Shown here: in pieces, positions 1 to 59,038 of the stretch | How the letters are laid out: the number at the start of each line of letters is the position of its first letter | How positions within the stretch are numbered: the stretch's first letter is position 1 | IMG/VR virus record: IMGVR_UViG_3300042923_000474 | Coordinates: 1 to 64,000 of that record | Length of the DNA stretch: 64,000 bases | Strand: one strand, 5' to 3' | Translations under genes and position numbers: made by a program | Notes under the pieces: generated by a model | Seen by the model: the letters and a program-made list of their open reading frames with translations, nothing else | The model's database searches: none | Told to the model about the DNA's origin: nothing

Positions 1-488
1 ACCACGTCAAACCCTAGCCCGATGAGGTCTTCGCTTTCAGCGTTGCTTCCCAAGGTGAGGTTGGTAGAGTCGTGGCTCAGGTAACGAACCGGAACCATGT
101 TGGAGTAGGGCGTGCTACGGGTCACACCACGGCGAAAGGGCGACTCCCCAATGAGGTAGATGGTTTTGTTACCCGAGTCACCAATGTGCATTCGACCATG
201 GTTGGATTGTGCGGTGAAGCCAAACGTCATGGCAATCTCATTAGAGAGAAAGCCACAGCGTCGGTAGATATCTTCCACAGTCCGAGAAAGGTCGTAGCCA
301 ACTTTCTGAGCCAGGGCAGTCAACATGCTTACCAGCCAATGGTCTGCTGCAACGAAACTAACGTCGTTGTTGCGCCACTGAATGAAAGCTTTGATATCCT
401 GTTCATAGTTGCTAATGAACTGATTGGATGCGCCCACCGGCGAAGGAGCTACGTCTTCCGGCAACGATCCGCCTGTGAGATCAAACAT
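1..488 (-). CDS. Conserved hypothetical protein, divergent from chmA (partial, runs off window)
   Basis: Manually translated and absent from the ORF track. AAGGA SD precedes ATG at 488 (MFDLTGGSLPEDVAPSPVG...); open to base 1. Confidence 0.75.
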   Translation of the reverse strand, partial: MFDLTGGSLPEDVAPSPVGASNQFISNYEQDIKAFIQWRNNDVSFVAADHWLVSMLTALAQKVGYDLSRTVEDIYRRCGFLSNEIAMTFGFTAQSNHGRMHIGDSGNKTIYLIGESPFRRGVTRSTPYSNMVPVRYLSHDSTNLTLGSNAESEDLIGLGFDV

Positions 489-650
489 CGTAGGAGTCCT
501 TATAAAGGGTGTGGGAAAGGTCAAAAGATAGACCAGTGTATTATTTCCGCAAGGGTGTTCCTATGGTATAGCTCACAAGCGATTGGCGCCGGACAGGTGC
601 ATTAACCCTTTGCCGCCGGTTTCTGAAATGGCTGGAAATAAGCTGATCTC

Positions 651-672
651 AGACCTAGACTATCAAGGTGAA
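651..672 (+). promoter_or_regulatory. Putative early (virion RNAP) promoter motif, copy 1, upstream of chmA
   Basis: AGACCTAGACTATCAAGGTGAA; one of five intergenic copies of ARACCTARAYTATYAANKTGAR. Confidence 0.65.
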
Positions 673-726
673 TGGTTCTGGAATTAGCTATTCATAGGCC
701 GAAATAATTCCATCAAGGAGACGGCA

Positions 727-2763
727 ATGCCCGTTGAAAAACGAGGCGACGCATCTTCTGGGAACATCATGGCAGAGGCTTTTAAGAAAGCCAATGTCGC
801 GACCCCGGAACCGTCGCCAAAACAACCCGAGACATCCGCAGCGTCTTCCGCTTCGAGTGCCCAGGTTGAAACTTCTGCGGTCGAAAGACCACAGCCTGCA
901 ATACGACAACGGCAAGCCCAGCAACGCGAAGCAGTTGTCGAACAATCCTCTCACGTGAAAAAGGACAGCATCAACATGTCTCAAACTGACTTCTCCCAAG
1001 GCCGCCGCGACCAGGGCAAAGACGCCAAGAACTTCAACACCCTGAACGACATGGGTGCGAAGCGTCTGCGTCCGCTCAGTCGTTCGGCTGGCTCCGTGCG
1101 CGCCAAAGAACTGGCAACTGCGATCGAGAAAGAGCTGAATGCTGGCCTGAACAAGGACGGCGTATCCAGCTGGGCTGTACAGATCCTGGACGCCGGTCAA
1201 CTGAACCTGCCAACCAGCTCGGTCGTGCTGCTGCAAACGGTCACCGCTGAAAGCATCGACCACATCACCATGTACTCGTTCATGATCGACGGCGCAGACA
1301 TTCGTCTGACTCCACGCGTGGACAAAGTCGATGGCCGTCCGTACGAAACCCCAGTGGTGATCGGCGACATCTACAACAGCCAGGACTACATCACTCGCGC
1401 CGAAGAGCTGATCAAGCAAGCCCGTCCAACCCGCCAGATCAACCTGATCGACGCCGGTGCGACCGTGTTCCCTGCTTCGTTCAACATCGAGCAACATGGC
1501 GTGTGGGACCTGCTGTACAAGGCCACTCTGGCCCTGTTCAACACCATGAACAACCAGGTTGATCTGGGCGAAGAGCCTGCGTACACCCTGGCCGGTCGCA
1601 ATGCCGGTAACGAGCAACTGGTTGGTCGCCTGAACTTCTCCGGCGAGAAGTACATCGACGAAGTCGGTCACCCACAACGTCACGATGTCGTGATCGAAAT
1701 GGACTCCGTGCGTCATCAGCAAGGTCGCGACTTCTCCGGCAACTCCAGCAACGTGACCAAGGTCGCGGGCTACATGGAACCGGTTTACGCTCAGCCTGAT
1801 CCGCAGAACCCAGCGAACAACCAGCCGTTCCTGAACCAGTTCGTTATCACCCAGCTGGCCACCGGTTACGACGCGATCGAAACCGAAATGACCATCCTGG
1901 CTCTGGTTACCTCGACCATGGTTCAAGTACGCAACGGCTGGGCTGACGCCTACCTGCCGCGCTACGCCAACCAGGGCAAAGAGCTGAACTACCGCGACGT
2001 CGGCGCGCTGGGCTTCTGCATGGGCGATGCCAAGCGTATCGACACCAAGGCTGCCAGCTTCAAGGACAACTTCGGCCAGTTCATGCGCGATTACTTCCGC
2101 CTGAACCAAGGCGTGATCTTCTCCATGGACATCCCTGAAGTCGGCCCTGATGCGTTCATCACTGACATCTTCCGCGCTGCGGCTGGTGGCAACCCGAACG
2201 CTGTAGCGGCAATCACCCAGGCGTGCGACAACCTGACCGGCGGTGTTTACAGCCAGAAGGTTGCTCAGTACGGCGGCAACTTCCCGATGTTCATCGACAC
2301 CGGCAACCGTATCCACAACGGTTACTACGTCAACGAAGCGGGCGAGCTGCGTGACATCCGTGACATCGACATGCTGGCAGTGGCCAACGTGCTCGGCAAA
2401 ACCAACCCGCAAGCGCTGGTTGACTACGCTGACTCGTACGTCGCATCCACCGGCCAAGCGGCCGTTCGCATGTCCAAGCGTCTGGCGATCATCGACGACG
2501 TGCTGCAAGGTCGTCAGGTCATCACTGGCTTCTCCGGTCGTTACATCATCGGCCCGAAATGGCTGCAGGTGATCTCCGAAGCTTGCCAAGCGTGCAACCT
2601 GGTTGTTAACCCAGCCAACATGGTTCACGGCCTGGGCTCGGGCGCTGTCCTCGGCGGTTACGACTACGCAGCATTCGCTGCCGGTGGTGCTGGCGGTGGC
2701 GTGTTCAACGGTGGCGGCAACAGCAACCCACAATCGGCTTACGCCGGTCGCGGTCGCTGGTAA
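727..2763 (+). CDS. chmA: Chimallin, phage nuclear shell protein
   Basis: Segment RDVGALGFCMGDAKRIDTKAASF closely resembles the ChmA motif (KDIGALGW...RIDTKAANF). Disordered N-terminus and G-rich C-terminal tail; lies directly upstream of nvRNAP beta'; AAGGAG SD. Second in-frame start with its own SD at 976. Confidence 0.9.
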   Translation: MPVEKRGDASSGNIMAEAFKKANVATPEPSPKQPETSAASSASSAQVETSAVERPQPAIRQRQAQQREAVVEQSSHVKKDSINMSQTDFSQGRRDQGKDAKNFNTLNDMGAKRLRPLSRSAGSVRAKELATAIEKELNAGLNKDGVSSWAVQILDAGQLNLPTSSVVLLQTVTAESIDHITMYSFMIDGADIRLTPRVDKVDGRPYETPVVIGDIYNSQDYITRAEELIKQARPTRQINLIDAGATVFPASFNIEQHGVWDLLYKATLALFNTMNNQVDLGEEPAYTLAGRNAGNEQLVGRLNFSGEKYIDEVGHPQRHDVVIEMDSVRHQQGRDFSGNSSNVTKVAGYMEPVYAQPDPQNPANNQPFLNQFVITQLATGYDAIETEMTILALVTSTMVQVRNGWADAYLPRYANQGKELNYRDVGALGFCMGDAKRIDTKAASFKDNFGQFMRDYFRLNQGVIFSMDIPEVGPDAFITDIFRAAAGGNPNAVAAITQACDNLTGGVYSQKVAQYGGNFPMFIDTGNRIHNGYYVNEAGELRDIRDIDMLAVANVLGKTNPQALVDYADSYVASTGQAAVRMSKRLAIIDDVLQGRQVITGFSGRYIIGPKWLQVISEACQACNLVVNPANMVHGLGSGAVLGGYDYAAFAAGGAGGGVFNGGGNSNPQSAYAGRGRW

Positions 2764-2770
2764 GAAGTTC

Positions 2771-2907
2771 GGCCGGGCGCGTAGTTCCCCTTCGCGCCTG
2801 ACTGTGCTACCGCTGAGTAATCAGCGGACGATAGGACGACTCGAAAGCCACTTGGTCGAAGACCAGGTCAACATAAAGGGTAGGCTGCCCTGTGATCGTC
2901 CGGGTAC
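2771..2907 (+). ncRNA. Candidate structured RNA element in the chmA 3' UTR
   Basis: Five manually identified helices, including CCGCTGA-GTAA-TCAGCGG and the long-range ACGAT/ATCGT pair; followed by a terminator. Confidence 0.5.
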
Positions 2908-2908
2908 T

Positions 2909-2935
2909 AGCCGCCCTCCAGGGGCGGCTTTACTT
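2909..2935 (+). terminator. Intrinsic terminator after chmA
   Basis: AGCCGCCC-TCCA-GGGGCGGCT hairpin followed by TTACTTATGC. Confidence 0.75.
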
Positions 2936-2969
2936 ATGCCCTCAATTCTTTTTTATGGGAGATTTGGCT

Positions 2970-4475
2970 GTGGGGTTAATTGCCTACATCGTTGACCATA
3001 AGCAACTCCTCAATGAACTTGAAGAGCCACCGCTTGTTGTCAATGACCTGAATCTTGACTTCGGGACAAAAGAAGGTAAAGATCAGCTGGCCATGTATCT
3101 GTCGTTTCAATTCGACGGCGACATCATCCCAGCGGTACCAACCTGTCTCGGCGGTCACATCGGCGGGGAAGATAAACTCGGCGATAAGTGTGAGATCTGT
3201 GATACTCGGGTAACCAGTCTCGTAGACCGCGCTGTGGATCAGAGTGTTTGGATTCGCCCACCGGAAGGTGTCAACGGATTTATTCACCCTGAAGTCTGGA
3301 ACGTGCTGTCCCCCAGGCTGACTCCGCTCAAATCGTTCTCGATGCTGAGCTGGGTGTGTGACCCGAACTACGGCGAGACGTTACCGGCATTCGCTGCGGT
3401 GCTCGACGAGTACAAGAAGTTACACAAGCGTAGCCTCAACTACGTGTTGGAAAACTTCGATGACGTGATTCACTTCATCATTACATCGAAGCTGTGCAAC
3501 AAACTGTCGCTACAGGACAAGACCGACATTCAGTTGTTCTTGCTGCAAAACCGTGACAAGGTAATCCAGAAGTATCTGCCGTTACCTAGCTCCATCTTCG
3601 TGGTGTCCGAAAAGACAGCGATGGGTACCTACGCTGACGAGAAGACACCTGCCCTGTTGGATGCGATCTACATGATCACCTCCACCTACGGATCGGCCAT
3701 TGCGCTGAACCAACGGCAACGCGAATCGCACGCTGCTCGTTTCATGGCGGCTATCGGTCCGTGTTATCAGGCAATCTGTACCAAGTTCATCGGCAGTAAG
3801 TATGGTCTGGTTCGTCGTCAATTGATCGGCAGCCGTCTGCACTTTACTGGCCGGGCGGTTATCACTTCCATCAGTGATTCCCACCATTATGAAGAGCTGC
3901 ATGTACCTTGGGCTTTCGCTGTACAAATCCTGGAACCACATCTGCAGAACAAACTGATGCGCCGAGGCTTCTCAGCCAACGATGCACTGGAGTTCCTGGA
4001 AGATCACACGCTGCAATGGCATCCACTGTTGCGTGAACTGTTTGACGAACTGATTGCCGAAGCTCCGCCAATCGATGACTTCCCACCTGGGGTCTTCGAG
4101 GACATCGACAATGATCCATCGCTACTGCGTGGCATTCCGTGCCTGCTGCAGCGTAACCCATCGCTGACCCGCTTGTCGGCTCAGTGCCTGCGTATCACCC
4201 GAATCAAAGACGATGTCGAGGATTACACCATCTCGCTGTCGAACATGATTCTGGTCAGTTACAACGCCGACTATGACGGTGACGAACTGAACCTGTTGCT
4301 GTGCCTGGACAGGAAGATGCTGCAGTGGTTCGAGCGTTTCCGTCCACACCTGGGCATGCGTTCGCTGCGTGAGCCGCGTTCTTTGTCCGACAACCAGAAG
4401 ATCCACGCACCGGTCGCCGCTACATGGGCGCACTACGTGCACCATTCTGAACGTAAATCACCTACTGTTCATTAG
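2970..4475 (+). CDS. rpoC: Non-virion RNA polymerase beta' N-terminal subunit with catalytic Asp motif (phiKZ gp55-like)
   Basis: Contains a Zn-binding CLGGH...CEIC segment, KYGLVRRQLIGSRLHFTGRAVI, LQRNPSL and NADYDGD. Start reassigned to GTG 2970 (GGGAG SD at 2957-2961); the ORF-track start lies inside the RNA element. Confidence 0.93.
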   Translation: MGLIAYIVDHKQLLNELEEPPLVVNDLNLDFGTKEGKDQLAMYLSFQFDGDIIPAVPTCLGGHIGGEDKLGDKCEICDTRVTSLVDRAVDQSVWIRPPEGVNGFIHPEVWNVLSPRLTPLKSFSMLSWVCDPNYGETLPAFAAVLDEYKKLHKRSLNYVLENFDDVIHFIITSKLCNKLSLQDKTDIQLFLLQNRDKVIQKYLPLPSSIFVVSEKTAMGTYADEKTPALLDAIYMITSTYGSAIALNQRQRESHAARFMAAIGPCYQAICTKFIGSKYGLVRRQLIGSRLHFTGRAVITSISDSHHYEELHVPWAFAVQILEPHLQNKLMRRGFSANDALEFLEDHTLQWHPLLRELFDELIAEAPPIDDFPPGVFEDIDNDPSLLRGIPCLLQRNPSLTRLSAQCLRITRIKDDVEDYTISLSNMILVSYNADYDGDELNLLLCLDRKMLQWFERFRPHLGMRSLREPRSLSDNQKIHAPVAATWAHYVHHSERKSPTVH

Positions 4476-4483
4476 GAGCAAGC

Positions 4484-4867
4484 ATGAATCAATTGGGCCC
4501 CAACCTAACCAAGATTCTGCAAGAGCAACAAGCAGATATCGATCCGCTGCTCAAGGGCATGATCGATGATCAGGGAGCCACCAATGCGGTGGTCGATGGC
4601 GTTGCTCAAGTCATCCTGGAAAAGATTGCCATGGCACAAGTCGTGGCAGTTACCAGCGCCGCCACACAGAACAAACCTGTGGACGTGAGTAAGATCCAAC
4701 AGGGGCGGGTTAAGCTTGTAGAGGGTCTGCTGATGATGTTGGAAGGTCAAGATGCTTTGATCGACTTCATCGGCGAAGACGAGATCCTGGGCGATGTCGA
4801 CTTACTGGAAGTTCTCCGTGAGTTCATCGCCTACAACCAGCCCCCAAGCGAGGAATCCGCACAATGA
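4484..4867 (+). CDS. Hypothetical protein
   Basis: AGGAG SD; operon spacing; ATGA overlap with the next gene. Confidence 0.8.
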   Translation: MNQLGPNLTKILQEQQADIDPLLKGMIDDQGATNAVVDGVAQVILEKIAMAQVVAVTSAATQNKPVDVSKIQQGRVKLVEGLLMMLEGQDALIDFIGEDEILGDVDLLEVLREFIAYNQPPSEESAQ

Positions 4868-5286
4868 GCCGTCTGCAAAAGTACGCTGAACTGCACCGCT
4901 ACGCTACCCGTCTGGCCGAAGACGATCTGACTGAAGATCAGGACGAAGCCGCGACCGTGGCCTACTCCGTGGGTCAAATCGCTCAGGCTGTGGGTACCAC
5001 CATCCAGGGCGTGGCGCTGCGCATCCACAAGACTGACGACCAAGCGGCCAAGGACATGTTCTACTCTGGTCTCTCGGAAGTTACCGAGCAGCTCAACGCC
5101 ATGTGTGAAAACGTCGGCGTCATGGCTGCACCGTTCTCCGGGCTGCGTGAAGAAGCTGATAGCGAGCTGTCGCCTCAGCTGCGTGACTCGGTGGCGATGT
5201 TCTCCGACGATGCTCACAGCAAAGTCCTGTTCCAGGCTCAGGAGTTCATCGCTGAGCATTTGAAAGAGGGCCGCGTCAGTGAGTAA
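4864..5286 (+). CDS. Hypothetical acidic helical protein (paralog of 5279-5689)
   Basis: Coupled start and biased codons; N-terminus MSRLQKYAELHR. Confidence 0.8.
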   Translation: MSRLQKYAELHRYATRLAEDDLTEDQDEAATVAYSVGQIAQAVGTTIQGVALRIHKTDDQAAKDMFYSGLSEVTEQLNAMCENVGVMAAPFSGLREEADSELSPQLRDSVAMFSDDAHSKVLFQAQEFIAEHLKEGRVSE

Positions 5287-5689
5287 TCTTTCGCGCTACA
5301 CCAACCTGCACCGCATGACCACCGACCTGAACGTGGATGCTCAGATCGACGTGGTTGAAGGCGACATCGCCAGCGAAGACCGTCAGGTAATCGCAGCAGT
5401 CGGTGCCAGCGTCATGGCGCTCGGCATGGGTATGGTTGAAGCCGCCGGTGGCGACTATCCCGAAGCGATGGACAACGCAGTGGCCAACCTGCTGGATCTG
5501 TCGGCAACACTGGCACCGGTTACCGCCAATGGTTTGGAAGCGCTGCGCGCTAACGTACCGGAAGCACTGGACGGTGATGATGTAGCCATGCTGAGCATCA
5601 TGGGCATGGGTCTGCGCGAGGTGGCAGCTTATCAGGCTGACCGCCGCGAACAAGAGTCACCGGTAGATGAAGAAGAGCCAATTGATTGA
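5279..5689 (+). CDS. Hypothetical acidic helical protein (paralog of 4864-5286)
   Basis: GTG start overlapping the previous gene; N-terminus MSNLSRYTNLHR. Confidence 0.8.
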   Translation: MSNLSRYTNLHRMTTDLNVDAQIDVVEGDIASEDRQVIAAVGASVMALGMGMVEAAGGDYPEAMDNAVANLLDLSATLAPVTANGLEALRANVPEALDGDDVAMLSIMGMGLREVAAYQADRREQESPVDEEEPID

Positions 5690-5698
5690 AGGTGAAAA

Positions 5699-6337
5699 AT
5701 GAACCAGGTCATTTACGGCGGAGAGAGTGTCATCAACGAGCTGGTGTACGGTGCTCGTTCTGATGCTCTGATTCAGGAGCTGAAGAATCACATCAGCGTC
5801 CAGAATCCAATGCTCACCGAACAAGGCCGGTTGTACGCACAGCAGGCCACTCAGGTGTTCGAGGAGGTATCTGGCTGGGATGCGGTGCGTGCTGCACGTA
5901 AAGCTGTATCGGCAGTCGATGGCTACGTTCGTAGTAATCAGATTTCCCCACTGACCACGGTAGAAGAATTGCAGGTCGCACCTCCACGCATGCAGCGTTG
6001 GGTTATGTGTGAGCCGGCAACTCGGTTGCTCTATCAGGAAGGTCGGATTGATGGTTACTCCGAATCGTATGTGGACATTCAACCTAATGCAGTCGGCAAA
6101 GATCATTACGATCATCGCTTGGCTATCAGCGGGTTGGTACGTGGCTACGAGTACGTCGAAGACGATGTTGAACAAGTCCGTTATGAGTTGACTCAAACTC
6201 ATGCCGAACTCGCATCGTGGGACGAACCGCTCACGCCACGTAACGTGGTAGACATCGGTCGGATGCACCAAGTGCAACGTCGCAGTCTCTTTGATGGGGC
6301 TGATGACTTTACCAGTCGTTTTGGTGGCAAGATCTGA
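5699..6337 (+). CDS. Conserved hypothetical jumbo-phage protein
   Basis: GAAGGTG SD; MQRWVMCEP...IDGYSESY...HYDHR block recalled as typical of phiKZ-like core hypotheticals. Confidence 0.8.
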   Translation: MNQVIYGGESVINELVYGARSDALIQELKNHISVQNPMLTEQGRLYAQQATQVFEEVSGWDAVRAARKAVSAVDGYVRSNQISPLTTVEELQVAPPRMQRWVMCEPATRLLYQEGRIDGYSESYVDIQPNAVGKDHYDHRLAISGLVRGYEYVEDDVEQVRYELTQTHAELASWDEPLTPRNVVDIGRMHQVQRRSLFDGADDFTSRFGGKI

Positions 6338-6344
6338 AGTAATG

Positions 6345-6379
6345 ATGAGGGTGGCCTTCGGGTCGCCCTCATTTTTATG
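6345..6379 (+). terminator. Intrinsic terminator
   Basis: 12-bp stem with TTCG loop (ATGAGGGTGGCC-TTCG-GGTCGCCCTCAT) followed by TTTTATG. Confidence 0.85.
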
Positions 6380-6408
6380 ACACTATTTTTTTTTTGCCGG
6401 AGATTGAC

Positions 6409-6834
6409 ATGGCGAACAATGCTTATCCATCGCTCGGTGGCTGGATCACGACTGTAGATAAAAAGTGTGATCTCATACTGGTTGATGCCTTTGCCAGTGA
6501 TCATGCTCAGTCCGACATCTTCTTGGGCAGCGTCACCAGCATCCAGTACATCATCTTCTCCAATGGACAAGACATCCTTGGGGCGGGTAATGAGATTGCC
6601 AACGCTTTGCAAAAGCTCTACATGCGTTACTTCGATGCCGCGATCTTCTCAGCCAAGGTAACAGAGTTCGCTGACAAGTCTGGTCGCCACGACATTGCCA
6701 TTACAGGCTCGGTGGTGCAAGAAGGTCGCAAGTACGATTTCGGTCGCCAGCTGGAATACTCCAATGGCATGTTCGTAAAACTCATGACTACATCTGGGGC
6801 TGTGCTATGGACACCGAATCAGGCGATGGGGTAA
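6409..6834 (+). CDS. Probable virion protein, tentatively gp25-like baseplate wedge
   Basis: GGAG SD, start moved to ATG 6409; size and ...LQKLYMRYF pattern. Function is inferred. Confidence 0.5.
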   Translation: MANNAYPSLGGWITTVDKKCDLILVDAFASDHAQSDIFLGSVTSIQYIIFSNGQDILGAGNEIANALQKLYMRYFDAAIFSAKVTEFADKSGRHDIAITGSVVQEGRKYDFGRQLEYSNGMFVKLMTTSGAVLWTPNQAMG

Positions 6835-7142
6835 AGACAATAAAGGTTGGGGTCATTGCTCACGTCCACGACAGCATGAGCGGCAGAACGGCCCTGATCA
6901 TTTCAGCCCTGCGTCGCATGCGGGATGTTGAAGTGGTGGAGCTGTCGGAGAAAGACGTACTCCTTGTTGAAGACGACATCCGTCCTAGGTTGATTGATCA
7001 ACTCAAAGACTACCCAGAGTCCACCCTCTATGGGAATGAGATGATCTCACCCTATGCGGGAATGGGTCGTCGTGGCAAGGGTGAACGCAAACGTGAGCGT
7101 GCGATGCAACGCAGGTTCTATGGCAAGAGGAATTCATTTTGA
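6807..7142 (+). CDS. Hypothetical protein with Arg/Lys-rich C-terminus
   Basis: Overlaps both neighbours; ends GRRGKGERKRERAMQRRFYGKRNSF. Confidence 0.7.
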   Translation: MDTESGDGVKTIKVGVIAHVHDSMSGRTALIISALRRMRDVEVVELSEKDVLLVEDDIRPRLIDQLKDYPESTLYGNEMISPYAGMGRRGKGERKRERAMQRRFYGKRNSF

Positions 7143-7831
7143 ACAGTGACGAACTGCAACAACTGAACGAGCGTAATAACGCTGTCGCTGCATTGGCCGA
7201 CAAGATCCCGTCTGGTATCCCCTACGGCGTCCGTGAAGCCATCGCTGAACTGAAACTCACTGGACTGGGTGAGTTGGTGCGGGTAGGCGAAGCAACCTTC
7301 GTACAGGAGATCCTACCAGCCTTGACGGGCGAAGAAGGAACGCTGGTTGACTTCAAGTGGTGGGGCTTTCGTTTCGGCAGTCCTTTCCGTGGCTTCTACA
7401 TCGTGGAAGACAATGACGCTTCCAAGGTCATCTTCGAAGTTCCACCCCTGCTCGACAGCAACTTCAAACTGAAGCCCGCTAAGTCCGCACGAGACACGGT
7501 ACGAGAAGCCGCTGCCAACTATGCCAACCGTGCCTACAATCGCCCTGCGCAGGCTAAGAGAGAGTTTAACGACGCACTGCGCGAGCGTATCGACTTCTCT
7601 GAAACCGGGCGACCACTTAAGCACATGGTGATGTTGGATCGGATCTTCATCCACTACGGAAAACCCTCTATCTTTGAGAAGGTTACCGACCCAGAAGTCT
7701 TAAAGGCGGTGGCTGAACTCAAAGCCGAACAGGGTGATACCGCTGCGACCCCAACGTCAGCAGCCTCAGCGACCCCTGCCCAACAAGTCTTCAGTGAAAT
7801 GGACTACTCCGATGAGGGGATGCTCGATTAA
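7139..7831 (+). CDS. Conserved hypothetical protein
   Basis: TTG start with GAGG SD; biased codon usage. Confidence 0.75.
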   Translation: MNSDELQQLNERNNAVAALADKIPSGIPYGVREAIAELKLTGLGELVRVGEATFVQEILPALTGEEGTLVDFKWWGFRFGSPFRGFYIVEDNDASKVIFEVPPLLDSNFKLKPAKSARDTVREAAANYANRAYNRPAQAKREFNDALRERIDFSETGRPLKHMVMLDRIFIHYGKPSIFEKVTDPEVLKAVAELKAEQGDTAATPTSAASATPAQQVFSEMDYSDEGMLD

Positions 7832-9014
7832 GATTGGCAGTACGAGCGATGTCCACATGGGGCACTTGCGTACGCCCTCCGAACTGATCTCGGAAAACTT
7901 CCAGAAGTATGTGTTGCCGGATAACGCAGTCACCGCAGAGCTGGATCTATTTACCATCTGTGGTGACTTCTGGGACCGCCTTCTGAACCTGCCGGACAAA
8001 GATGCTTACACGGGTCGTATGTTATTGGTCTACATCCTGTTGGTGTGTGCCAAGTACAACATCATCCTACGCATCCTGGAAGGCACGCCCCGTCACGACC
8101 GTAAGCAGTCGCGGATGGTGCAAGAGCTGATTGAACTCATGAAGCTCGATGTTGATTACAAGTACATGGATGGCTGTCAGATCGAGTACATTGAAAAGCT
8201 CGATATTCATGTGCTGTACATTCAGGACGAATACGGTACACCTGACTCTGCATTGGCCGAGTTCAAACGCTTGTTGCATGAGCGGAATTTGGAGAAGGTG
8301 GATATCGCAGTAATGCACGGACAGTTTGAGCATCAACTACCCGACGTGGAAGGTGCCAGACACAAGTGTCACATTGCTCGCGAATATCTGGCGCTGGTGC
8401 GCTACCTGATCCTGATTGGACACGACCACAGGTTCAGCGAGTTTCGTCTCCCTGAGTTTCCTGGCGTCATTATCTCTCATGGTTCTCCCGACCGTTTGAT
8501 TCACGGTGAGGAAGAGCCTAAGGGATCGGTGCGTGTGGTGATCGATGAGAAGGAGAACGTGAATGTTACCTTCGTCGAGAACAAGGGGGCAATGGATTAC
8601 CGTACACTGGATGTACAAGGGCTGTCGACCGACCAAGTGATGGACATGATTACCCAGCTCAAGTTACGAGAGGGGAGTCACATCCGGCTCAAGGGTGACA
8701 TTTTCGATAAAGGACTGCGGATGATTCGTCATCTGCGCAAAGACTTCCCGCAGTACCGTCTGGAACCTTTCCCGATAAAAGAGAAGAAGAGAGAGTTGGA
8801 GGCTGTCAAAACATCCTCGTCTACTTACTCCCCTATCCAAATCGGTGAGACCAACGTTGTGGAGATGACCCGCGTGTGGCTGTTGAACAACGGGCACTCT
8901 GAGACGGAGGTGAAGGACTGTGAGGACTACCTGAATGAGCAAATCAACGCAAGCGCTGGCAGCCAGAGAGCAAGGCCAGTTTCCGATTTCCAAGGGGACC
9001 AGCTTAGCCATTGA
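7812..9014 (+). CDS. sbcD: SbcD/Mre11-like metallophosphoesterase nuclease
   Basis: Motifs SDVH, GDFWD, GTPRHD, MHG and GHDH. Start is ATG 7812 or ATT 7827, not 7734. Confidence 0.85.
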   Translation: MRGCSIKIGSTSDVHMGHLRTPSELISENFQKYVLPDNAVTAELDLFTICGDFWDRLLNLPDKDAYTGRMLLVYILLVCAKYNIILRILEGTPRHDRKQSRMVQELIELMKLDVDYKYMDGCQIEYIEKLDIHVLYIQDEYGTPDSALAEFKRLLHERNLEKVDIAVMHGQFEHQLPDVEGARHKCHIAREYLALVRYLILIGHDHRFSEFRLPEFPGVIISHGSPDRLIHGEEEPKGSVRVVIDEKENVNVTFVENKGAMDYRTLDVQGLSTDQVMDMITQLKLREGSHIRLKGDIFDKGLRMIRHLRKDFPQYRLEPFPIKEKKRELEAVKTSSSTYSPIQIGETNVVEMTRVWLLNNGHSETEVKDCEDYLNEQINASAGSQRARPVSDFQGDQLSH

Positions 9015-9798
9015 GTCGTTGGCTAACATGATCCCCGACCGAGATCACATCAAGCCTACCCCGATCGGACAGATCGACGTGTTGCTGGTAAACATCCGTA
9101 CCATTTACCGCAACATGTTGGGTGGGCTGAAAGCTGCTGCAAAAGAACTGGTGGCTGCTGAGGATCTGCCGGACTACATCTTTCAAGAGATGCAGCAGAT
9201 TCGTACAGCGGTCAGCAAGATCAGCAACAACAAAGTGGAAGCGTACTTCTATCTGTGTACTTACCCGGACTTGAAGAAGCGTTTCCCTAAGGCGATGCTG
9301 ATCGAACCGAATACCCTGAAACAGAAAGCTGCCAAAGCCATGGAAGACCAGGTGATGGCAGCGATGGCTGCAAGCCCTCAACTGTACGGGTATCCAAAGA
9401 TCTTCGAGTATTTTGTAGAAGGCGGTAAACTTGAGAACGAACGGGTGGCTGTTCTGACCCACCTCCCCCTGGACTTGGTAAATCGCTACCAGTTCAAGGA
9501 GATGTATTTGCTAGAGAGCAACACTGGCGCATTCAAAAAGCCCAGCGAGTTCAACAGCAAGTTCAAGGTGAAACCAGAAGGCACTCACCTGCCGTTCTCT
9601 CTGTTTACGCTTCAGATCTTTGGTGACGGAGGCAAGATGTTCATGCCGATGTTGTCTGAGGTCACAAGCTTTGTGGCGGACGTGGCCAAGTCTAATCGCT
9701 GGACCCCACTTACCACAGCGGAGAAGATCAAGTACAACTTGGACAATGCACCGCACAACAAGTTTTCAGTGTTCCTGAAGACATTACTACGCGATTAA
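8935..9798 (+). CDS. Conserved core protein (phiKZ gp66-like); possible degenerate PIN/FEN fold
   Basis: GAGG SD; synteny between SbcD and ChmC; VLLVNIRTIYRN and VLTHLPLDL patterns. Confidence 0.6.
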   Translation: MSKSTQALAAREQGQFPISKGTSLAIESLANMIPDRDHIKPTPIGQIDVLLVNIRTIYRNMLGGLKAAAKELVAAEDLPDYIFQEMQQIRTAVSKISNNKVEAYFYLCTYPDLKKRFPKAMLIEPNTLKQKAAKAMEDQVMAAMAASPQLYGYPKIFEYFVEGGKLENERVAVLTHLPLDLVNRYQFKEMYLLESNTGAFKKPSEFNSKFKVKPEGTHLPFSLFTLQIFGDGGKMFMPMLSEVTSFVADVAKSNRWTPLTTAEKIKYNLDNAPHNKFSVFLKTLLRD

Positions 9799-9861
9799 AC
9801 CACAACCGATCCTGGCTATTGTTTGTGACCCAACACCCCAATTTTTTCAAGGAGCATCGCC

Positions 9862-10590
9862 ATGTCCGGCGGTAACGCAGCCCGTACCAACCTCCCCACC
9901 GCGCTGATTGAATTCCGTCTGCGTTTGACTGCTGACAAATTGCCAGAAGGTCGTAAAAACCCGAACCTGGAAGTGAGCGTCAACAAGAAGAACGAAGTCC
10001 AGATCGGTTGCAACACCGGCATCTTCGGTGCCGACAATGCCATGGTTCGTATCCAGGGTACCATGGGCGCATTGGAGTTCAGCCTCCTGCACATGTACGC
10101 TGAAGACATCCACGCCAAAGAACCCGGCTTCAAGTTCCCGCTGCTCCGCCTGTATGGCCCACGCAAGAAGCGCACTCCGCAAGACGCCGGCAAAGGTCTC
10201 GATGCCGTGGTTCTGGTCGGCAAAGACGCGAATGGCGCTTGTTTCATCTCGGTCATGCGCAAAGATGCTCCGCAGGTCAAGTTCATCTTCCAACCTGGCC
10301 GCTGGACTGAAATGGTTGATGCAACCACCCAGCAACCACTGTCGCAAGCTGAGCTGTCCAACTGGTACTCCCAGGCCTGGGCCCGCACCTTTGCACCGCT
10401 GGTTTCCTACGCCCTGAACGTCAAGGTGTACGACTTCCGCGAAGACAACGACCAGAACGGCGGTGGCCAGAACAACAACGGTCAGCAGAACAATTACCAA
10501 CAGCGCAACAACCAGCAGCAGGCGCCGGCTCAAGCAGCTGCTCCAGCTGGCGGCGACTTCGGCGGCTTCGACGACGACATCCCGCTGTAA
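9862..10590 (+). CDS. chmC: Probable ChmC, nucleus-associated nucleic-acid-binding protein
   Basis: Immediately upstream of the sigma-like nvRNAP subunit; N/Q/G-rich disordered tail ending DDDIPL; AAGGAG SD; strong codon bias. Confidence 0.6.
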   Translation: MSGGNAARTNLPTALIEFRLRLTADKLPEGRKNPNLEVSVNKKNEVQIGCNTGIFGADNAMVRIQGTMGALEFSLLHMYAEDIHAKEPGFKFPLLRLYGPRKKRTPQDAGKGLDAVVLVGKDANGACFISVMRKDAPQVKFIFQPGRWTEMVDATTQQPLSQAELSNWYSQAWARTFAPLVSYALNVKVYDFREDNDQNGGGQNNNGQQNNYQQRNNQQQAPAQAAAPAGGDFGGFDDDIPL

Positions 10591-10601
10591 GAAAGCTTTA
10601 C

Positions 10602-10633
10602 AAATGGTGGGCCCAACGGCCTACCATTTATGC
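10602..10633 (+). terminator. Intrinsic terminator
   Basis: AAATGGTGGGCC-CAAC-GGCCTACCATTT followed by ATGC. Confidence 0.8.
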
Positions 10634-10673
10634 TCCCGAGTTGAAAAGTTGGCATAACGAACAACCAGATTTG

Positions 10674-10695
10674 AAACCTAAATTATCAACGTGAG
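10674..10695 (+). promoter_or_regulatory. Putative early promoter motif, copy 2
   Basis: AAACCTAAATTATCAACGTGAG, 43 nt upstream of the nvRNAP specificity-subunit gene. Confidence 0.65.
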
Positions 10696-10738
10696 CATCC
10701 CCCAAGATGTTCGTAACTGACCAAGGAGCCCACGAACG

Positions 10739-12262
10739 ATGGAGATCTTAATTGAAGGTTATTCTCCTACGGGAGCCTTCAAACGGGTTGCCGTGGTACA
10801 TGACGGCAAAACGATCTCGTGGAACACGCAGACTTATTCCAAGCTGAAGTTCCACAATGCGGCAGTGATCTTTAAAGAGATCAACGAACTCTGGGCTAAG
10901 AAGTCGCCTGAGGTTCAGAAGAAGATCTTCGCAGCTTTTGAGGAGATTCATCAACATCTCACAGAGCCCGAGGATAACCAACAGCAGGTCGAAAGACTGG
11001 GCGTGTTGGTGGCAATTATCTACAAGCACTTTACAGCCAAGGATGCCGAAGATATCGTCAACAGTTTGAACTTGACGTATCCAAGCTCCATGGTGGAAGA
11101 CTACACCAGCATCCCCGACAACGGTCGAACCCATACACGGGCAGACTACCACAGACTGGTTCAGCTGGCGATTCGCCTGCGTCCCATGTTGCCGGTGTTC
11201 GGGCAGTACATCCACACGTTCTTGGATCAGCCGGGCTCCCAGTATCGGGAAACCAGCGCGGTCAAGATCCTGAACGATACAGATGTGCTCAGGATGCCTG
11301 CGGTAGAAAAGCTGGTTGGTTTCATGGAGGCAACTCTCAAGAACTTCCAGCACCAGGACTCAGCTATCTTGGGTGGGAAACTGGGTTCTGCGGAAATGCC
11401 TTACTGGCTGGTCGCCAAGGCTATCTTCCGAAGAATTGCGCCGGGTGAAGTACACAGCGTGGACGATGTTTCTTCGATCATCACCAACGTGTACAACTTT
11501 GTGGTGAAGTCGACGCTCGACTCCATCCCAAGGAACTTTGGCGGCACCAAGAACAAGACCCGCACAACCGAAGGCTCGGGTAAGGATGAAAACGTTTCGT
11601 TGTTGGAGGCGATCCGTATCCGTGAGCAGGTATCGGGTGGTCGTCGGAAGATTGTTGACATCTACTCGCGGAACATCTTGTTCACTGCGCGTCGTGTTGA
11701 TCCGACTGTACCAGAAGACCTCGTGCACGAATGCTGCCGCCCTGACATGGCTCGCATCAGTCGTTCCGTACATCCAGTACAAAAGGTCTTGGCCTGCTGG
11801 GTGATGTCTCGTGGTCAGCCACCGAGCCACTACGACCTGCTCAAACGCGAACCTGTGTACCGCTTCATCGGAGCTGCCCAAGCTCTGCTGTGGCATTGGG
11901 GTTACATGGAACTCGCTGCGCTGATGGAAGCTGCACCTGTGCAGGATCTGACCATGGCTCCCGCTGCTGCTCTCTGGGCACGCGAAGAGCTGAGCAAAGA
12001 AAGACTGGAGCGGTTGCGTGAGCGTTATCCGTACACCACCCAGTTGACCCGTGGTAGCCAAAACCCCGATGAGGCTGTCAAGGGTGTCGTGGAGAATGCT
12101 GAGCTAGCTCGGATGATCCACAGTGAAGAATGGGTCCTGGACAAAGACTCGCGGTTCTACAACATCGTGAACCACAACGAGCATGGACACATCATCCTGT
12201 CCCCAGGTTTCCGCAACACAATCGCTGACCTACAACTCGATGTGTCCTCGGGTACTTGGTAA
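10739..12262 (+). CDS. nvRNAP sigma-like promoter-specificity subunit (phiKZ gp68-like)
   Basis: About 500 aa, positioned between ChmC and PicA upstream of the beta/beta' genes; AAGGAG SD. Assigned mainly by synteny. Confidence 0.7.
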   Translation: MEILIEGYSPTGAFKRVAVVHDGKTISWNTQTYSKLKFHNAAVIFKEINELWAKKSPEVQKKIFAAFEEIHQHLTEPEDNQQQVERLGVLVAIIYKHFTAKDAEDIVNSLNLTYPSSMVEDYTSIPDNGRTHTRADYHRLVQLAIRLRPMLPVFGQYIHTFLDQPGSQYRETSAVKILNDTDVLRMPAVEKLVGFMEATLKNFQHQDSAILGGKLGSAEMPYWLVAKAIFRRIAPGEVHSVDDVSSIITNVYNFVVKSTLDSIPRNFGGTKNKTRTTEGSGKDENVSLLEAIRIREQVSGGRRKIVDIYSRNILFTARRVDPTVPEDLVHECCRPDMARISRSVHPVQKVLACWVMSRGQPPSHYDLLKREPVYRFIGAAQALLWHWGYMELAALMEAAPVQDLTMAPAAALWAREELSKERLERLRERYPYTTQLTRGSQNPDEAVKGVVENAELARMIHSEEWVLDKDSRFYNIVNHNEHGHIILSPGFRNTIADLQLDVSSGTW

Positions 12263-12288
12263 GCAAACATTTTTAAAGGAAAAGTGCT

Positions 12289-13902: not shown

Positions 13903-13913
13903 TAGGAAGTACC

Positions 13914-15284
13914 ATGGAAAATACATTGGAAAAGACGCTCAACTTCCTGACCGAAATCCTGCAGTCTTTGGGGATGACGGTCAAAGGGCGCTCCATTCTC
14001 ATCGAGGGTGAGGATGGGGAATACGAAATCGAGGTGGATGGCAAGACCTTGGTTCTGCCTACCGAGGAAACGCTCAAGCTGTCGAAGTGGGATAAGGAGA
14101 TTGCCTTCTTCCCGCTCTGCGAAAGCACACTGCGCGGTGAATCGGAAGTGCAGCACGAGCTGCTGTCCATGGTCAAGGGTGCGGTCAACGTGCGTTTGGC
14201 CAGTCTGTTGTGGGAGCTGTTCAAGGTAGCGAACAGCGAGGAATGTAAAGCAAACAAACTCTCGCCAGAACAGGCTGAGTTCCTGCCGCACATTCCAGGG
14301 TTCGACGCCAACATGGTGAAGAACATGGGCAAGCTTGTATTGGGTGTTGATCCCACCGAGTACAAGACCAGCCTGATCCACATGAACCTCAAGCGTCGTA
14401 CCAAGATCAACGGTCAGCCGTTCGATCGTGCGTGCCTGGTTCGTTTCCCATTGGCTGAGATGGAACGCAAGGAGAAGCCATTCGGCGTCGAACTGCGCGT
14501 CAAGGACATGGATGCTCTGCTGAGTCTGCTGGACTACGTGCTGCCTGATTGGCAAATCGAGAACAGCTACAGTCGTGGTACCGACAGCAAGGTTGCTCCG
14601 TATTTCGTGGCGACCCTGATGGCGTACCAGAACATCAATGCTCGCATCACGCTGCTGGCGAAACGCTTCGTGCCAACCTTCCCCAAGTTCGGGGCACTGG
14701 TCAACGAAGACAACTGGGTCGAGTGCATGGATGACCTGCACCGCATGCGTGATTGCATGCCTAACCTGCCGGGTAACGACGGCGCCGTAGTTCGCGGGGG
14801 TGGTAATGGTGGGGATGCTCCTATCATTACCAACGAACCCAAGGTGGCTCGCTCAGCACCCATGCCGACGAAGACGCAGCCGAACCTCCCGTGGGAAGAA
14901 CAGTCGCAGGCTCAATCCGCGCCAGCTCAACCTACGCACCGTGCTCCAGCAGCTGATGACGATGTCGTTGAATACGTTCCTCGTCAGGCTGTCCATCCGC
15001 AGGCGGGACAGATCCCAGTAGGTCATGAACAAACCTACGCAACACCGGGCACTGTCCCAGCAGGCTATGGCAGTACAAACGGCCCAAGCTTTGCCGAGAT
15101 CCAGCGTTCACGTATGCAGGGTCCGGCTTACGCAGCGGTCAACCAACCACCACCTGTCGGCGGCAGCTCCTTTAGCTCCGACTATCGCGGCGCAGATACA
15201 ACCGGCAATGTAAACGGTTACAACGTCGGCTACGTCACACCAGCAGCTAACCAGTACGCTCAGCCAACCGGCCGGGGCTACTGA
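13914..15284 (+). CDS. Conserved core protein (phiKZ gp70-like) with long Pro/Gln/Gly-rich disordered C-terminus
   Basis: Synteny; AGGAAG SD; low-complexity tail. Confidence 0.7.
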   Translation: MENTLEKTLNFLTEILQSLGMTVKGRSILIEGEDGEYEIEVDGKTLVLPTEETLKLSKWDKEIAFFPLCESTLRGESEVQHELLSMVKGAVNVRLASLLWELFKVANSEECKANKLSPEQAEFLPHIPGFDANMVKNMGKLVLGVDPTEYKTSLIHMNLKRRTKINGQPFDRACLVRFPLAEMERKEKPFGVELRVKDMDALLSLLDYVLPDWQIENSYSRGTDSKVAPYFVATLMAYQNINARITLLAKRFVPTFPKFGALVNEDNWVECMDDLHRMRDCMPNLPGNDGAVVRGGGNGGDAPIITNEPKVARSAPMPTKTQPNLPWEEQSQAQSAPAQPTHRAPAADDDVVEYVPRQAVHPQAGQIPVGHEQTYATPGTVPAGYGSTNGPSFAEIQRSRMQGPAYAAVNQPPPVGGSSFSSDYRGADTTGNVNGYNVGYVTPAANQYAQPTGRGY

Positions 15285-15285
15285 C

Positions 15286-15686: not shown

Positions 15687-15714
15687 GAGTGAGTTCCTGA
15701 GGTAAGGGAATTTG

Positions 15715-15736
15715 AGACCTAGATTATTAAGTTGAA
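15715..15736 (+). promoter_or_regulatory. Putative early promoter motif, copy 3
   Basis: AGACCTAGATTATTAAGTTGAA, upstream of the nvRNAP beta gene. Confidence 0.65.
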
Positions 15737-52571: not shown

Positions 52572-52588
52572 GGATATTAAAGTATCTC

Positions 52589-52610
52589 AGACCTAGACTA
52601 TCAATTTGAA
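52589..52610 (+). promoter_or_regulatory. Putative early promoter motif, copy 4
   Basis: AGACCTAGACTATCAATTTGAA, immediately after a terminator. Confidence 0.65.
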
Positions 52611-58820: not shown

Positions 58821-58858
58821 CATAGAGGCCAGCCTTCGGGCTGGCTTTTATGCCGTCG
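58821..58858. terminator. Bidirectional terminator after MCP
   Basis: CATAGAGGCCAGCC-TTCG-GGCTGGCTTTTATG followed by CCGTC. Confidence 0.88.
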
Positions 58859-58989: not shown

Positions 58990-59016
58990 AATAGCCTCCT
59001 AGTTTAAACGAAATAC

Positions 59017-59038
59017 AAACCTAAATTATCAATGTGAG
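59017..59038 (+). promoter_or_regulatory. Putative early promoter motif, copy 5
   Basis: AAACCTAAATTATCAATGTGAG, upstream of the operon containing nvRNAP beta-N. Confidence 0.65.

What the first reader, a model, noticed from the sequence alone, without database searches (positions are those of the whole stretch)
651..672. Five-copy 22-bp motif marking early/nucleus genes: candidate virion-RNAP promoter
Seen: ARACCTARAYTATYAANKTGAR at 651, 10674, 15715, 52589 and 59017. All copies are intergenic, on the same strand, and upstream of chmA, the sigma-like subunit, nvRNAP beta-C, an accessory cassette and the beta-N operon. I saw no copy before structural genes. Established: phiKZ-like phages use the packaged vRNAP for early genes, with a short AT-rich consensus (TATATTAC in phiKZ). 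Inference: this is a longer, lineage-specific vRNAP promoter.
Basis: partly seen in the sequence, partly recalled or inferred. Interest (0 to 1): 0.6.

Follow-up and report, generated by a model that had tools for sequence, protein, structure and literature searches.

The report
Early promoter of a jumbo phage
The repeated 22-base motif is real and is almost certainly the early promoter read by the RNA polymerase that this nucleus-forming giant phage carries in its particle, but it is the same conserved promoter type already described for phages EL, phiKZ, OBP and AR9, not a new lineage-specific signal.

Summary
The five exact copies sit at the stated coordinates, all on the + strand and all intergenic, where chance predicts none. 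The window is the first 64 kb of a 231.7-kb, 54% GC chimallivirus genome. That genome holds 19 copies (at least 29.6 bits; nothing between 8 and 29 bits), all on the + strand. The conserved block is about 37 bp, not 22.

Copies lie after terminator hairpins. In at least 15 of 19 cases they lie 24-85 nt (157 nt for one copy) before a start codon with a ribosome-binding site. They head the operons for the nuclear shell protein ChmA and for every non-virion RNA polymerase subunit homolog. No copy heads a virion-polymerase, capsid, portal, sheath or terminase gene.

Four related IMG/VR contigs keep the motif at the same syntenic sites, on one strand only.

The motif is not lineage-specific:
- It nearly equals the published phage EL promoter consensus.
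- It aligns without gaps with the experimentally mapped phiKZ and AR9 early promoters.
- A matrix built only from this genome finds phiKZ's own early promoters in register.

By that alignment the start site is the invariant G at motif position 20 (window 670, 10693, 15734, 52608, 59036). No early-infection RNA data exist for this phage. Verdict: a real, new member of a known kind.

The parts
636..672 (+). Predicted start site is G670. It heads ChmA (727-2763) and, by read-through, the gp55-like nvRNAP subunit.
   Evidence: (46.3 bits). In one search, an RNA-library contig from run X20 starts at 680 and nothing in the RNA libraries covers 1-679.
10659..10695 (+). Early-promoter copy 2. Predicted start site is G10693. 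It heads the gp68-like (sigma-like) nvRNAP subunit (10739-12262) and the gp69 and gp70 homologs.
   Evidence: (48.0 bits). The orthologous copy is kept in G001 and G003.
15700..15736 (+). Early-promoter copy 3. Predicted start site is G15734. It heads the gp71-73-like (15816-17921) and gp74-like (17918-19918) nvRNAP subunits and the gp75-like helicase.
   Evidence: (42.0 bits). The orthologous copy is kept in G001 and G003.
52574..52610 (+). Early-promoter copy 4. Predicted start site is G52608. It heads three small ORFans (about 52660-54187) that have no family match.
   Evidence: (43.4 bits). Orthologous copies are in G001, G003 and G004.
59002..59038 (+). Early-promoter copy 5. Predicted start site is G59036. 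It heads 59193-60338, the gp123-like nvRNAP subunit (60357-61976) and the gp124 homolog.
   Evidence: (45.5 bits). Orthologous copies are in G001 and G004.
10603..10633 (+). Terminator hairpin plus TTTATGC tail, closing the upstream operon 41 nt before the 22-mer of copy 2.
   Evidence: The stem shows compensatory changes in relatives. It has the same form as the conserved phiKZ terminator motif (PMC10914365).
52529..52567 (+). Terminator hairpin plus TTTATGC tail before copy 4.
58826..58854 (+). Terminator hairpin plus TTTTATGCC tail after the major capsid gene (56473-58794). It separates that late gene from promoter copy 5.
2909..2939 (+). Terminator-like hairpin plus TTACTTATGC just after chmA. 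The gp55-like nvRNAP gene downstream has no promoter copy of its own, so it needs read-through.

Best explanation
The motif is the early-class promoter of this chimallivirus (a nucleus-forming phiKZ-like jumbo phage). The multisubunit virion RNA polymerase is injected with the DNA. The genome encodes its gp178, gp180, gp149 and gp80 homologs.

Inferred mechanism: this polymerase binds an element of about 37 bp spanning roughly -34 to +3. The element reads tTTAAc, N5, aTtTs, ARACCTARAYTATYAA, NK, TGAr. Transcription starts at the invariant G of TGA, 6 nt after the TAT of the core.

The transcripts carry 5' leaders of about 24-85 nt that end in a Shine-Dalgarno site. They encode what the phage needs before any phage protein has been made: the nuclear shell protein, all five non-virion RNA polymerase subunits, a helicase, nucleotide-metabolism enzymes, a DNA polymerase operon and many small ORFans.

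Each unit is insulated from the operon before it by a hairpin-TTTATGC terminator.

Shown here: the anatomy, the distribution, the conservation and the homology to mapped promoters. Inferred: which polymerase reads the motif, the timing, and the exact start site.
For: 1. Non-random, discrete class. There are 5 of 5 exact copies in the window against 0 expected. The genome has 19 sites at 29.6-48 bits, all + strand and none on the minus strand. Nothing scores between 8 and 29 bits, and simulated genomes reach at most 14 bits.

2. Promoter anatomy. All copies are intergenic and point the same way as the next gene. A start codon with a ribosome-binding site lies 21-82 nt after the motif in most cases. 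Terminator hairpins lie just upstream.

3. Genes served (tblastn against phiKZ). These are ChmA plus gp55, then gp68, then gp71-73 plus gp74, and gp123, which together are every nvRNAP subunit homolog. They also include thyA and the gp50-like DNA polymerase operon. The nvRNAP cannot transcribe its own genes first. The vRNAP homologs (23502-24785 on the minus strand, 113023-113703, 127944-133942) and the capsid, portal, sheath and terminase genes have no copy.

4. Conservation. Four related IMG/VR contigs (about 70-87% nucleotide identity) carry 14/0, 0/10, 3/0 and 2/0 forward/reverse copies; the reversed-pattern control found 0. All 26 copies examined map to sites orthologous to ours. Motif positions 0-11 are 83-92% identical against about 62-75% in the flanks.

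5. Homology to validated promoters. The skeleton TNARRNNNANAYTAYNNNNNTG hits 9 of our copies and 12 phiKZ sites, all on the forward strand. Our matrix, scored with phiKZ background, gives 9 plus-strand hits at 8 bits or more, against 1 on the minus strand and 0.7 in simulations. All 9 are in register with phiKZ TATAT[TC]AC, and the best hit is the gp54 promoter. The two consensus strings agree at 21 of 37 positions without gaps.

6. Literature. Every RNAP-encoding jumbo phage has such a motif before its early operons, and it was confirmed wherever transcripts were profiled (PMC7598289). AR9 early promoters read AAATATATATTAT-(6N)-G+1, and phiKZ and phiR1-37 start 6 nt after the element (PMC5312081). 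The phiKZ gp54 primary start site carries the early motif (PMC8244752). The EL consensus WTTTYAAACCTACATTATY is nearly identical to ours (PMC7058600). EL has 6 forward and 0 reverse matches to our pattern, and two of them precede homologs of genes that follow our copies 115691 and 159768.

7. No sigma-70-like site coincides with copies 651, 10674 or 15715. The tool found 7 such sites in 20 kb against 11.5 expected.

8. Weak RNA hint. In a rhizosphere metatranscriptome, a 202-nt contig (depth 6.9) starts at 680, which is 10 nt after the predicted start. Nothing in the RNA libraries covers 1-679.
Against: There is no direct transcript 5'-end, timing or polymerase-dependence data for this phage. 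The RNA evidence is a single low-depth assembled contig, which cannot define a start and may include DNA carry-over.

The footprint is biased, because the relatives' loci were chosen for having the motif.

The gp55-like subunit has no copy of its own and lies beyond a terminator-like hairpin after chmA, so it depends on read-through.

Copies 115691 and 137403 are followed by about 0.55 and 1.2 kb with no convincing ORF.

The operon after 115691 includes a homolog of a phiKZ structural protein, gp174.

My gene map is a home-made codon-usage caller, not a curated annotation.
Confidence: 0.85

Rival explanations
1. The motif is a promoter, but it is read by the non-virion RNA polymerase (a middle class), or by both phage polymerases, rather than by the virion enzyme alone.
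For: In phiKZ, gp54 has both an early and a middle promoter (PMC8244752). Some units served here (the DNA polymerase operon, thyA, the gp174 homolog) could plausibly be needed later.
Against: The motif heads all nvRNAP subunit operons, which must be expressed before nvRNAP exists. It aligns in register with the phiKZ and AR9 early consensus. It does not match the phiKZ middle motif (TACT at -22 after an A-repeat) or the late motif (TATG).
Confidence: 0.05
2. The motif is a promoter read by the host RNA polymerase with sigma-70 or an alternative sigma factor.
For: It contains TA-rich hexamers (TAnAyT, TATCAA) and an upstream T/A-rich block, loosely like -10 and -35 elements.
Against: No sigma-70-type match coincides with the three copies in 1-20000, and such sites are fewer than in shuffles. 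The invariant ACCTA and TGA positions are not explained by a sigma-70 reading. phiKZ-like phages transcribe independently of host RNAP. The same element is kept in phages of very different hosts (Pseudomonas EL and phiKZ, Bacillus AR9).
Confidence: 0.03
3. The motif acts at the RNA level as a 5'-leader element (a processing site, translation signal or localisation signal), transcribed from a start further upstream.
For: It lies at a short distance before ribosome-binding sites. Copies 10674, 137403 and 222332 share about 20 further similar bases downstream.
Against: Terminator hairpins end only about 20-40 nt before the element, leaving no room for another promoter. There is no conserved pairing: the ACCT/AGGT complementarity of copy 651 is absent in other copies. 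The RNA-library contig starts after the motif. In phiKZ and AR9 the homologous element lies upstream of mapped primary 5' ends.
Confidence: 0.03
4. The motif is a DNA site for something other than transcription initiation, such as a regulator operator, a replication or partition site, or a mobile-element or homing target.
For: It is long and highly conserved, and operators can overlap promoters.
Against: Its orientation strictly matches the downstream genes: 19 of 19 here, and one strand only in four relatives and in EL. It has a fixed place between terminator and ribosome-binding site. There is no dyad symmetry, and no flanking repeat or endonuclease gene travels with it.
Confidence: 0.04

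Closest known systems
Predicted early promoter of Pseudomonas phage EL (consensus WTTTYAAACCTACATTATY; PMC7058600 Table 2, citing the EL genome paper)
   Same: The core is almost base-for-base the same: TTTs-AaACCTA-n-AtTATy. EL gives 6 forward and 0 reverse matches to our 22-mer at 3 mismatches or fewer. Two EL copies precede homologs of the genes that follow our copies 115691 and 159768.
   Different: EL has C where ours has R (CTACAT against CTARAY). The published EL consensus stops before the AANKTGAR part, although the EL sites do carry TGA. The phages are only distantly related: our terminase is at most about 46% identical to any cultured phage. EL's motif is also only a prediction.
phiKZ early (vRNAP) promoter, core TATATTAC, mapped by primer extension, dRNA-seq and ONT-cappable-seq
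   Same: The skeleton and spacing are the same: A-rich block, N, TTTnARR, N3, AnAYTAY, N5, TG. Our matrix finds phiKZ early promoters in register. Both sit before gp54, gp68 and gp121-123. Both have about 19-32 sites, on the leading strand, after hairpin-TTAT terminators.
   Different: Ours has ACC-TAgAtTATc where phiKZ has (a/t)(t/c)n-TATATTAC. Our version is less AT-rich, in a 54% GC genome. Ours has not been mapped experimentally.
AR9 early promoter AAATATATATTAT-(6N)-G+1 (PMC5312081)
   Same: It has an ATATTAT-like core followed by six bases and a conserved G start. Ours is ARAYTAT-(6N)-G. AR9 early transcription was shown to be independent of protein synthesis, hence due to vRNAP.
   Different: AR9 is a uracil-DNA Bacillus phage. 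Its upstream part is a plain AT run, without the ACC or TTTs-ARA features.
OBP, N1M2 and 201phi2-1 predicted promoters (PMC7058600 Table 2)
   Same: TTTYARR-YAK-ATATTATY-WWAD-TG aligns without gaps with our TTTs-ARA-CCT-ARAYTATY-AANK-TG. There are about 31 copies per genome, before early operons.
   Different: The three bases before the core differ (YAK against CCT). All of these are predictions only.
Bacterial sigma-70 promoter
   Same: It is a bipartite element upstream of the start site, with a TA-rich segment near -10.
   Different: There is no TTGACA/TATAAT match at the right spacing. Conservation is continuous from -24 to +3, including the start site. The enzyme family has no sigma-70.

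Membership tests
phiKZ-like (chimallivirus) early promoter read by the virion RNAP | An extended, highly conserved A/T-rich element centred near -10, with a conserved start site 6 nt downstream of the core (G) | tested here: met
   The sequence skeleton and spacing align without gaps with the phiKZ, AR9, OBP and EL consensus strings. An invariant TGA lies 6 nt after TAT. The start site itself is inferred, not measured.
phiKZ-like (chimallivirus) early promoter read by the virion RNAP | Tens of copies per genome, intergenic, pointing the same way as the downstream operon | tested here: met
   There are 19 copies, all intergenic, all on the + strand, each followed by + strand genes.
phiKZ-like (chimallivirus) early promoter read by the virion RNAP | It heads early genes, including the nvRNAP subunits and the nuclear shell gene, and does not head virion or late genes | tested here: met
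   the ChmA, gp55, gp68, gp71-73, gp74 and gp123 homologs all lie in motif-headed units. The vRNAP, capsid, portal, sheath and terminase genes do not. The soft exception is the gp174 homolog after copy 115691.
phiKZ-like (chimallivirus) early promoter read by the virion RNAP | The genome encodes a multisubunit virion RNAP | tested here: met
   tblastn against phiKZ finds homologs of gp178 (E=0), gp180 (4e-80), gp80 (3e-60) and gp149 (2e-33). Packaging of these proteins into virions was not tested.
phiKZ-like (chimallivirus) early promoter read by the virion RNAP | Primary transcripts start at the motif within minutes of infection, without new protein synthesis and without host RNAP | not testable with these tools
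   The only data are assembled contigs from environmental RNA libraries. One contig starts at 680, 10 nt after the predicted start. The raw-read run X21 had no reads on the stretch.
phiKZ-like (chimallivirus) early promoter read by the virion RNAP | Kept at orthologous sites in related phages | tested here: met
   all 26 copies examined in four related contigs (29 sites listed) map to our copies. The ortholog of copy 230384 in G001 was found by the matrix in L030.
Sigma-70 host promoter | TTGACA, 16-18 nt spacer, TATAAT | tested here: not met
   no such site at copies 651, 10674 or 15715. There are 7 sites in 20 kb against 11.5 expected.
phiKZ-type intrinsic terminator (hairpin followed by TTAT) | A GC-rich stem-loop followed by a TTAT(G/T)YY tail at the 3' ends of operons, some of them bidirectional | tested here: met
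   One search finds about 35 sites on both strands. These include the bidirectional pairs 54199/54230 and 74433/74462, which lie between convergent genes. The phiKZ consensus is given in PMC10914365.

The most novel reading that the evidence does not exclude
The most novel reading still open is this. The early-promoter grammar (A-rich block, TTTnARR, N3, AnAYTAY, N6 to G+1) is ancestral to all phages with a split virion RNA polymerase. It has been held nearly unchanged from AT-rich Pseudomonas and Bacillus phages to this uncultured 54% GC soil and rhizosphere lineage. One cross-family model could then predict early regulons in any such phage. The invariant ACC and TGA positions would also mark direct contacts of a vRNAP whose promoter-recognition subunit is still unknown.
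Probability: 0.5. Interest if true: 0.4.

Novelty: new member of a known kind. Interest (0 to 1): 0.3.

Why it matters
For this uncultured phage, the motif gives a ready-made map of the early regulon: 19 transcription units, about two thirds of them headed by genes with no known family. It also gives predicted single-base start sites.

The motif adds a GC-rich, deeply branching genome to the set showing that virion-polymerase promoters of nucleus-forming phages share one skeleton. That helps automated annotation of metagenomic jumbo phages. It also helps studies of how the vRNAP, which has no known sigma-like factor, recognises DNA.

It does not reveal a new mechanism.

Tried and rejected
- A near-identity DNA search of the first 20 kb against GenBank phages found nothing. 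The phage has no close cultured relative: terminase is at most about 46% identical and ChmA at most 28%.
- The viral-contig pattern scan gave 20 stretches. Nine lie in four true relatives. The other 11 are single matches in unrelated contigs and were taken as chance.
- Supplementary start-site tables for phiKZ were not held for two papers. The phiKZ start position is therefore taken from the text of PMC5312081 and PMC7598289.
- Reads. Run X21 (raw reads) had nothing on the stretch. X3 covers the whole stretch evenly and is probably DNA. X19 and X20 give only five short contigs, so no start site could be measured.
- An RNA hairpin within the motif (ACCT...AGGT in copy 651) was rejected, because the other copies do not keep the pairing.
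- The TTTATG after hairpins was first considered as a phiKZ-like late TATG promoter. It was rejected because it occurs on both sides of hairpins between convergent genes, and it matches the known phiKZ terminator tail.
- A simple 6-mer enrichment search for a second (middle or late) promoter class returned only ribosome-binding sites, terminator words and a weak GGCTAT signal.
- ARAGORN found no tRNA genes.
- Two search calls failed on term syntax, as did one paper look-up.

Full report
OBSERVATION

The pattern ARACCTARAYTATYAANKTGAR occurs exactly five times in the window, at 651, 10674, 15715, 52589 and 59017. All are on the + strand, and 100 dinucleotide shuffles gave no match. Allowing three mismatches adds no further site in the window.

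The window is bases 1-64000 of a single 231,724-bp contig with 53.9% G+C. A position matrix covering -15 to +21 around the 22-mer finds 19 sites in the whole genome, scoring 29.6-48 bits. All are on the + strand, none on the minus strand, and nothing scores between 8 and 29 bits. Twenty simulated genomes reached at most 14 bits.

There is an invariant A ten bases before it, a TTTAAC-like block, five variable bases, then aTtTs. The element is therefore about 37 bp.

WHAT THE GENOME IS

The ORF at 727-2763 is a nuclear shell protein (phrog_4795, E=8e-73). Its best phage match is only 27.9% identical.

A tblastn of a home-made gene set against phiKZ shows long syntenic blocks (sequence fetched, search). 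It finds homologs of:
- all five non-virion RNA polymerase (nvRNAP) subunits: gp55, gp68, gp71-73 (fused into one ORF here), gp74 and gp123;
- all four virion RNA polymerase (vRNAP) subunits: gp80, gp149, gp178 and gp180;
- the capsid, portal, sheath and terminase proteins.

The terminase is at most about 46% identical to that of any cultured phage, and there is no near DNA match. This is an uncultured, deep-branching chimallivirus.

Public runs that hold it come from soil, leaf litter, plant, rhizosphere and wastewater samples. In a relative, the contig's end joins its start, so the genome is probably complete and circularly permuted (locus L030).

ANATOMY AROUND THE COPIES

Every copy is intergenic and points the same way as the next gene. 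Copies 15715, 59017 and 115691 lie in divergent regions next to minus-strand genes.

In at least 15 of 19 cases, a start codon with an AAGGA/GGAG ribosome-binding site lies 21-82 nt after the 22-mer.

Many copies are preceded within about 20-40 nt by a GC-rich hairpin followed by TTTATGC. In relatives the stems change by compensatory substitutions. The same hairpin-plus-tail occurs on both strands between convergent genes (54199/54230 and 74433/74462). It matches the conserved terminator reported for phiKZ, a stem-loop followed by TTAT (PMC10914365).

So each copy sits between the terminator of one unit and the leader of the next.

GENES SERVED

- Copy 651 heads chmA and, beyond a terminator-like hairpin at 2909-2939, the gp55 homolog.
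- Copy 10674 heads the gp68, gp69 and gp70 homologs.
- Copy 15715 heads the gp71-73, gp74 and gp75 homologs.
- Copy 59017 heads 59193-60338, then the gp123 and gp124 homologs.
- Other copies head a thymidylate synthase unit (191005), the unit ending in the gp50-like DNA polymerase (222332), and many ORFans with no PHROG match.

None of the vRNAP genes is headed by a copy, nor are the capsid, portal, sheath, tube or terminase genes. Because nvRNAP cannot make its own first transcripts, the units carrying its five subunits must be read by something present at injection.

According to the phiKZ structure paper, gp55 and gp74 are beta'-like. gp71-73 (DPBB lysines, flap) and gp123 (Si1-like region) are beta-like, and gp68 is sigma-like (PMC8287921).

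RELATIVES

A pattern scan of IMG/VR found four related contigs: G001 230,984 bp, G002 140,672 bp, G003 47,961 bp and G004 47,029 bp. They are about 70-87% identical in DNA to our genome. They carry 14/0, 0/10, 3/0 and 2/0 forward/reverse copies at three mismatches or fewer, and the reversed-pattern control found none.

All 26 copies examined lie at positions orthologous to copies in our genome. In alignments of these regions, motif positions 0-11 are 83-92% identical against about 62-75% in the flanks. That footprint is biased, because the loci were picked for having the motif. The positional orthology and single-strand rule are not affected by this.

COMPARISON WITH KNOWN PROMOTERS

A review states that every RNAP-encoding jumbo phage has a conserved motif before its presumed early operons. 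The motif was confirmed as the early promoter wherever transcripts were profiled, and it is centred near -10 (PMC7598289).

Table 2 of PMC7058600 lists the predicted consensus strings:
- EL: WTTTYAAACCTACATTATY
- OBP: BSHAWWWWWTTTYARRYAKATATTATYWWADTG
- N1M2: similar to OBP
- 201phi2-1: ...TTTRARR_BTATATTACDWHDGTG
- phiKZ: TATATTAC

The EL string is essentially our motif. The OBP string aligns with ours base for base without gaps.

I checked phiKZ directly. Its TATATTAC sites (29 forward, 8 reverse in 250 kb) sit in an extended context, with an A-rich block, TTTnAGA and a TG(A) six bases after the core. These sites lie before gp54, gp68 and gp121-123, the same syntenic places as our copies 651, 10674 and 59017.

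A shared skeleton, TNARRNNNANAYTAYNNNNNTG, hits 9 of our copies and 12 phiKZ sites, all on the forward strand.

Our matrix was built only from this genome. Scored with phiKZ base composition, it gives 9 forward hits at 8 bits or more in phiKZ, against 1 reverse hit and 0.7 expected in simulations. All nine are in register with TATAT[TC]AC, and the best is the gp54 promoter. The two consensus strings agree at 21 of 37 positions.

EL has six forward and no reverse matches to our 22-mer. Two of them precede homologs of the first genes after our copies 115691 and 159768.

START SITE

AR9 early promoters read AAATATATATTAT-(6N)-G+1. phiKZ and phiR1-37 start 6 nt after their element (PMC5312081). 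In the ungapped alignment this is our invariant G, position 20 of the 22-mer: 670, 10693, 15734, 52608 and 59036 in the window. The element then spans about -34 to +3, which resembles the 'extended -10 box plus T-rich motif upstream of -19' described for phiKZ (PMC8244752).

The only RNA data are assembled contigs. In a rhizosphere metatranscriptome, a 202-nt contig at depth 6.9 covers 680-881, and nothing in the two RNA libraries covers 1-679. This agrees with the prediction but is weak evidence. Contigs cannot define ends, and DNA may be present in the libraries.

RIVALS

- Host sigma-70 promoter. This is disfavoured. No TTGACA/TATAAT-type site coincides with the three copies in 1-20000, and such sites are fewer than in shuffles. 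The same element also serves phages of unrelated hosts.
- nvRNAP (middle-class) promoter. This conflicts with the motif heading the nvRNAP genes. The motif also does not resemble the phiKZ middle or late motifs.
- RNA-level leader element. This is unlikely. Terminators leave no room for an upstream promoter, no pairing is conserved, and the homologous elements in phiKZ and AR9 lie upstream of primary 5' ends.
- Non-transcriptional DNA site. This does not explain the strict orientation with downstream genes in six genomes.

VERDICT

I put it at about 0.85, short of certainty because no transcript mapping exists for this phage.

The claims that the motif is lineage-specific and longer than the phiKZ promoter are not supported. 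It is the family-wide early promoter, closest to the phage EL version, found in a new uncultured lineage.

Novelty: a new member of a known kind. Interest is modest. The practical value is a clean early-regulon map of 19 units and a further data point for the conservation of vRNAP promoter grammar.

Noticed in passing
Genome-wide; in the window at 2909-2939, 10603-10633, 47500-47540, 52529-52567, 54202-54235 (both strands) and 58826-58854: About 35 GC-rich hairpins (often with a TTCG loop) are followed by a conserved T(T)TATGCY tail rather than a long T run. They occur on both strands at operon ends, including bidirectional ones between convergent genes. This is the same form as the conserved phiKZ terminator motif, so the terminator grammar is also shared across distant chimalliviruses.
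   Followed up: partly
G000 137425-138590 and 115713-116266 (outside the window): Promoter copies 137403 and 115691 are followed by about 1.2 kb and 0.55 kb with no convincing ORF by my codon-usage caller. These could be non-coding RNAs, as reported for phiKZ 5' leaders, or missed small genes.
   Followed up: no
window 10696-10716; G000 137425-137445 and 222354-222374: Three promoter copies share about 20 further similar bases just after the start site (GAGCATCCCCCAAGATGTTCG-like). This suggests a common leader element or recent duplication of promoter cassettes.
   Followed up: no
G000 75782-75798 and several other upstream regions of units without the early motif: The word GGCTAT is enriched about 6-fold (9 against 1.5 expected) upstream of non-early units. 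One case is a palindrome, CGGCTATAAAATAGCCG, between divergent genes at 75739-75838 next to the gp131-like tail gene. It is a possible middle or late (nvRNAP) promoter word.
   Followed up: no
window 15816-17921: The gp71-73 homolog is one uninterrupted 701-aa ORF. In phiKZ the corresponding gene is split around gp72.
   Followed up: no
window 58861-58989 (minus strand): A 42-aa minus-strand ORF with a strong AGGAGG ribosome-binding site lies between the capsid-gene terminator and promoter copy 5. The relatives have no counterpart there (alignment).
   Followed up: no
whole genome G000: ARAGORN finds no tRNA or tmRNA gene in 231.7 kb, although phiKZ is reported to encode tRNAs (PMC8244752). 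In relative G001 the contig end joins the start (L030), so the genome appears complete and circularly permuted.
   Followed up: partly
window 2517-2718, 4281-4478, 5610-5777, 680-1101: Short contigs from two rhizosphere metatranscriptome runs match the phage at 99% or more. This hints that the phage or a near-identical strain was active, or at least present, in those samples. DNA carry-over cannot be excluded.
   Followed up: partly
window 688-2733 (minus strand) and many others: Very long 'shadow' ORFs lie opposite real genes, for example 681 aa opposite chmA. They are an ordinary by-product of codon bias in a 54% GC genome, but a trap for ORF-based annotation.
   Followed up: yes
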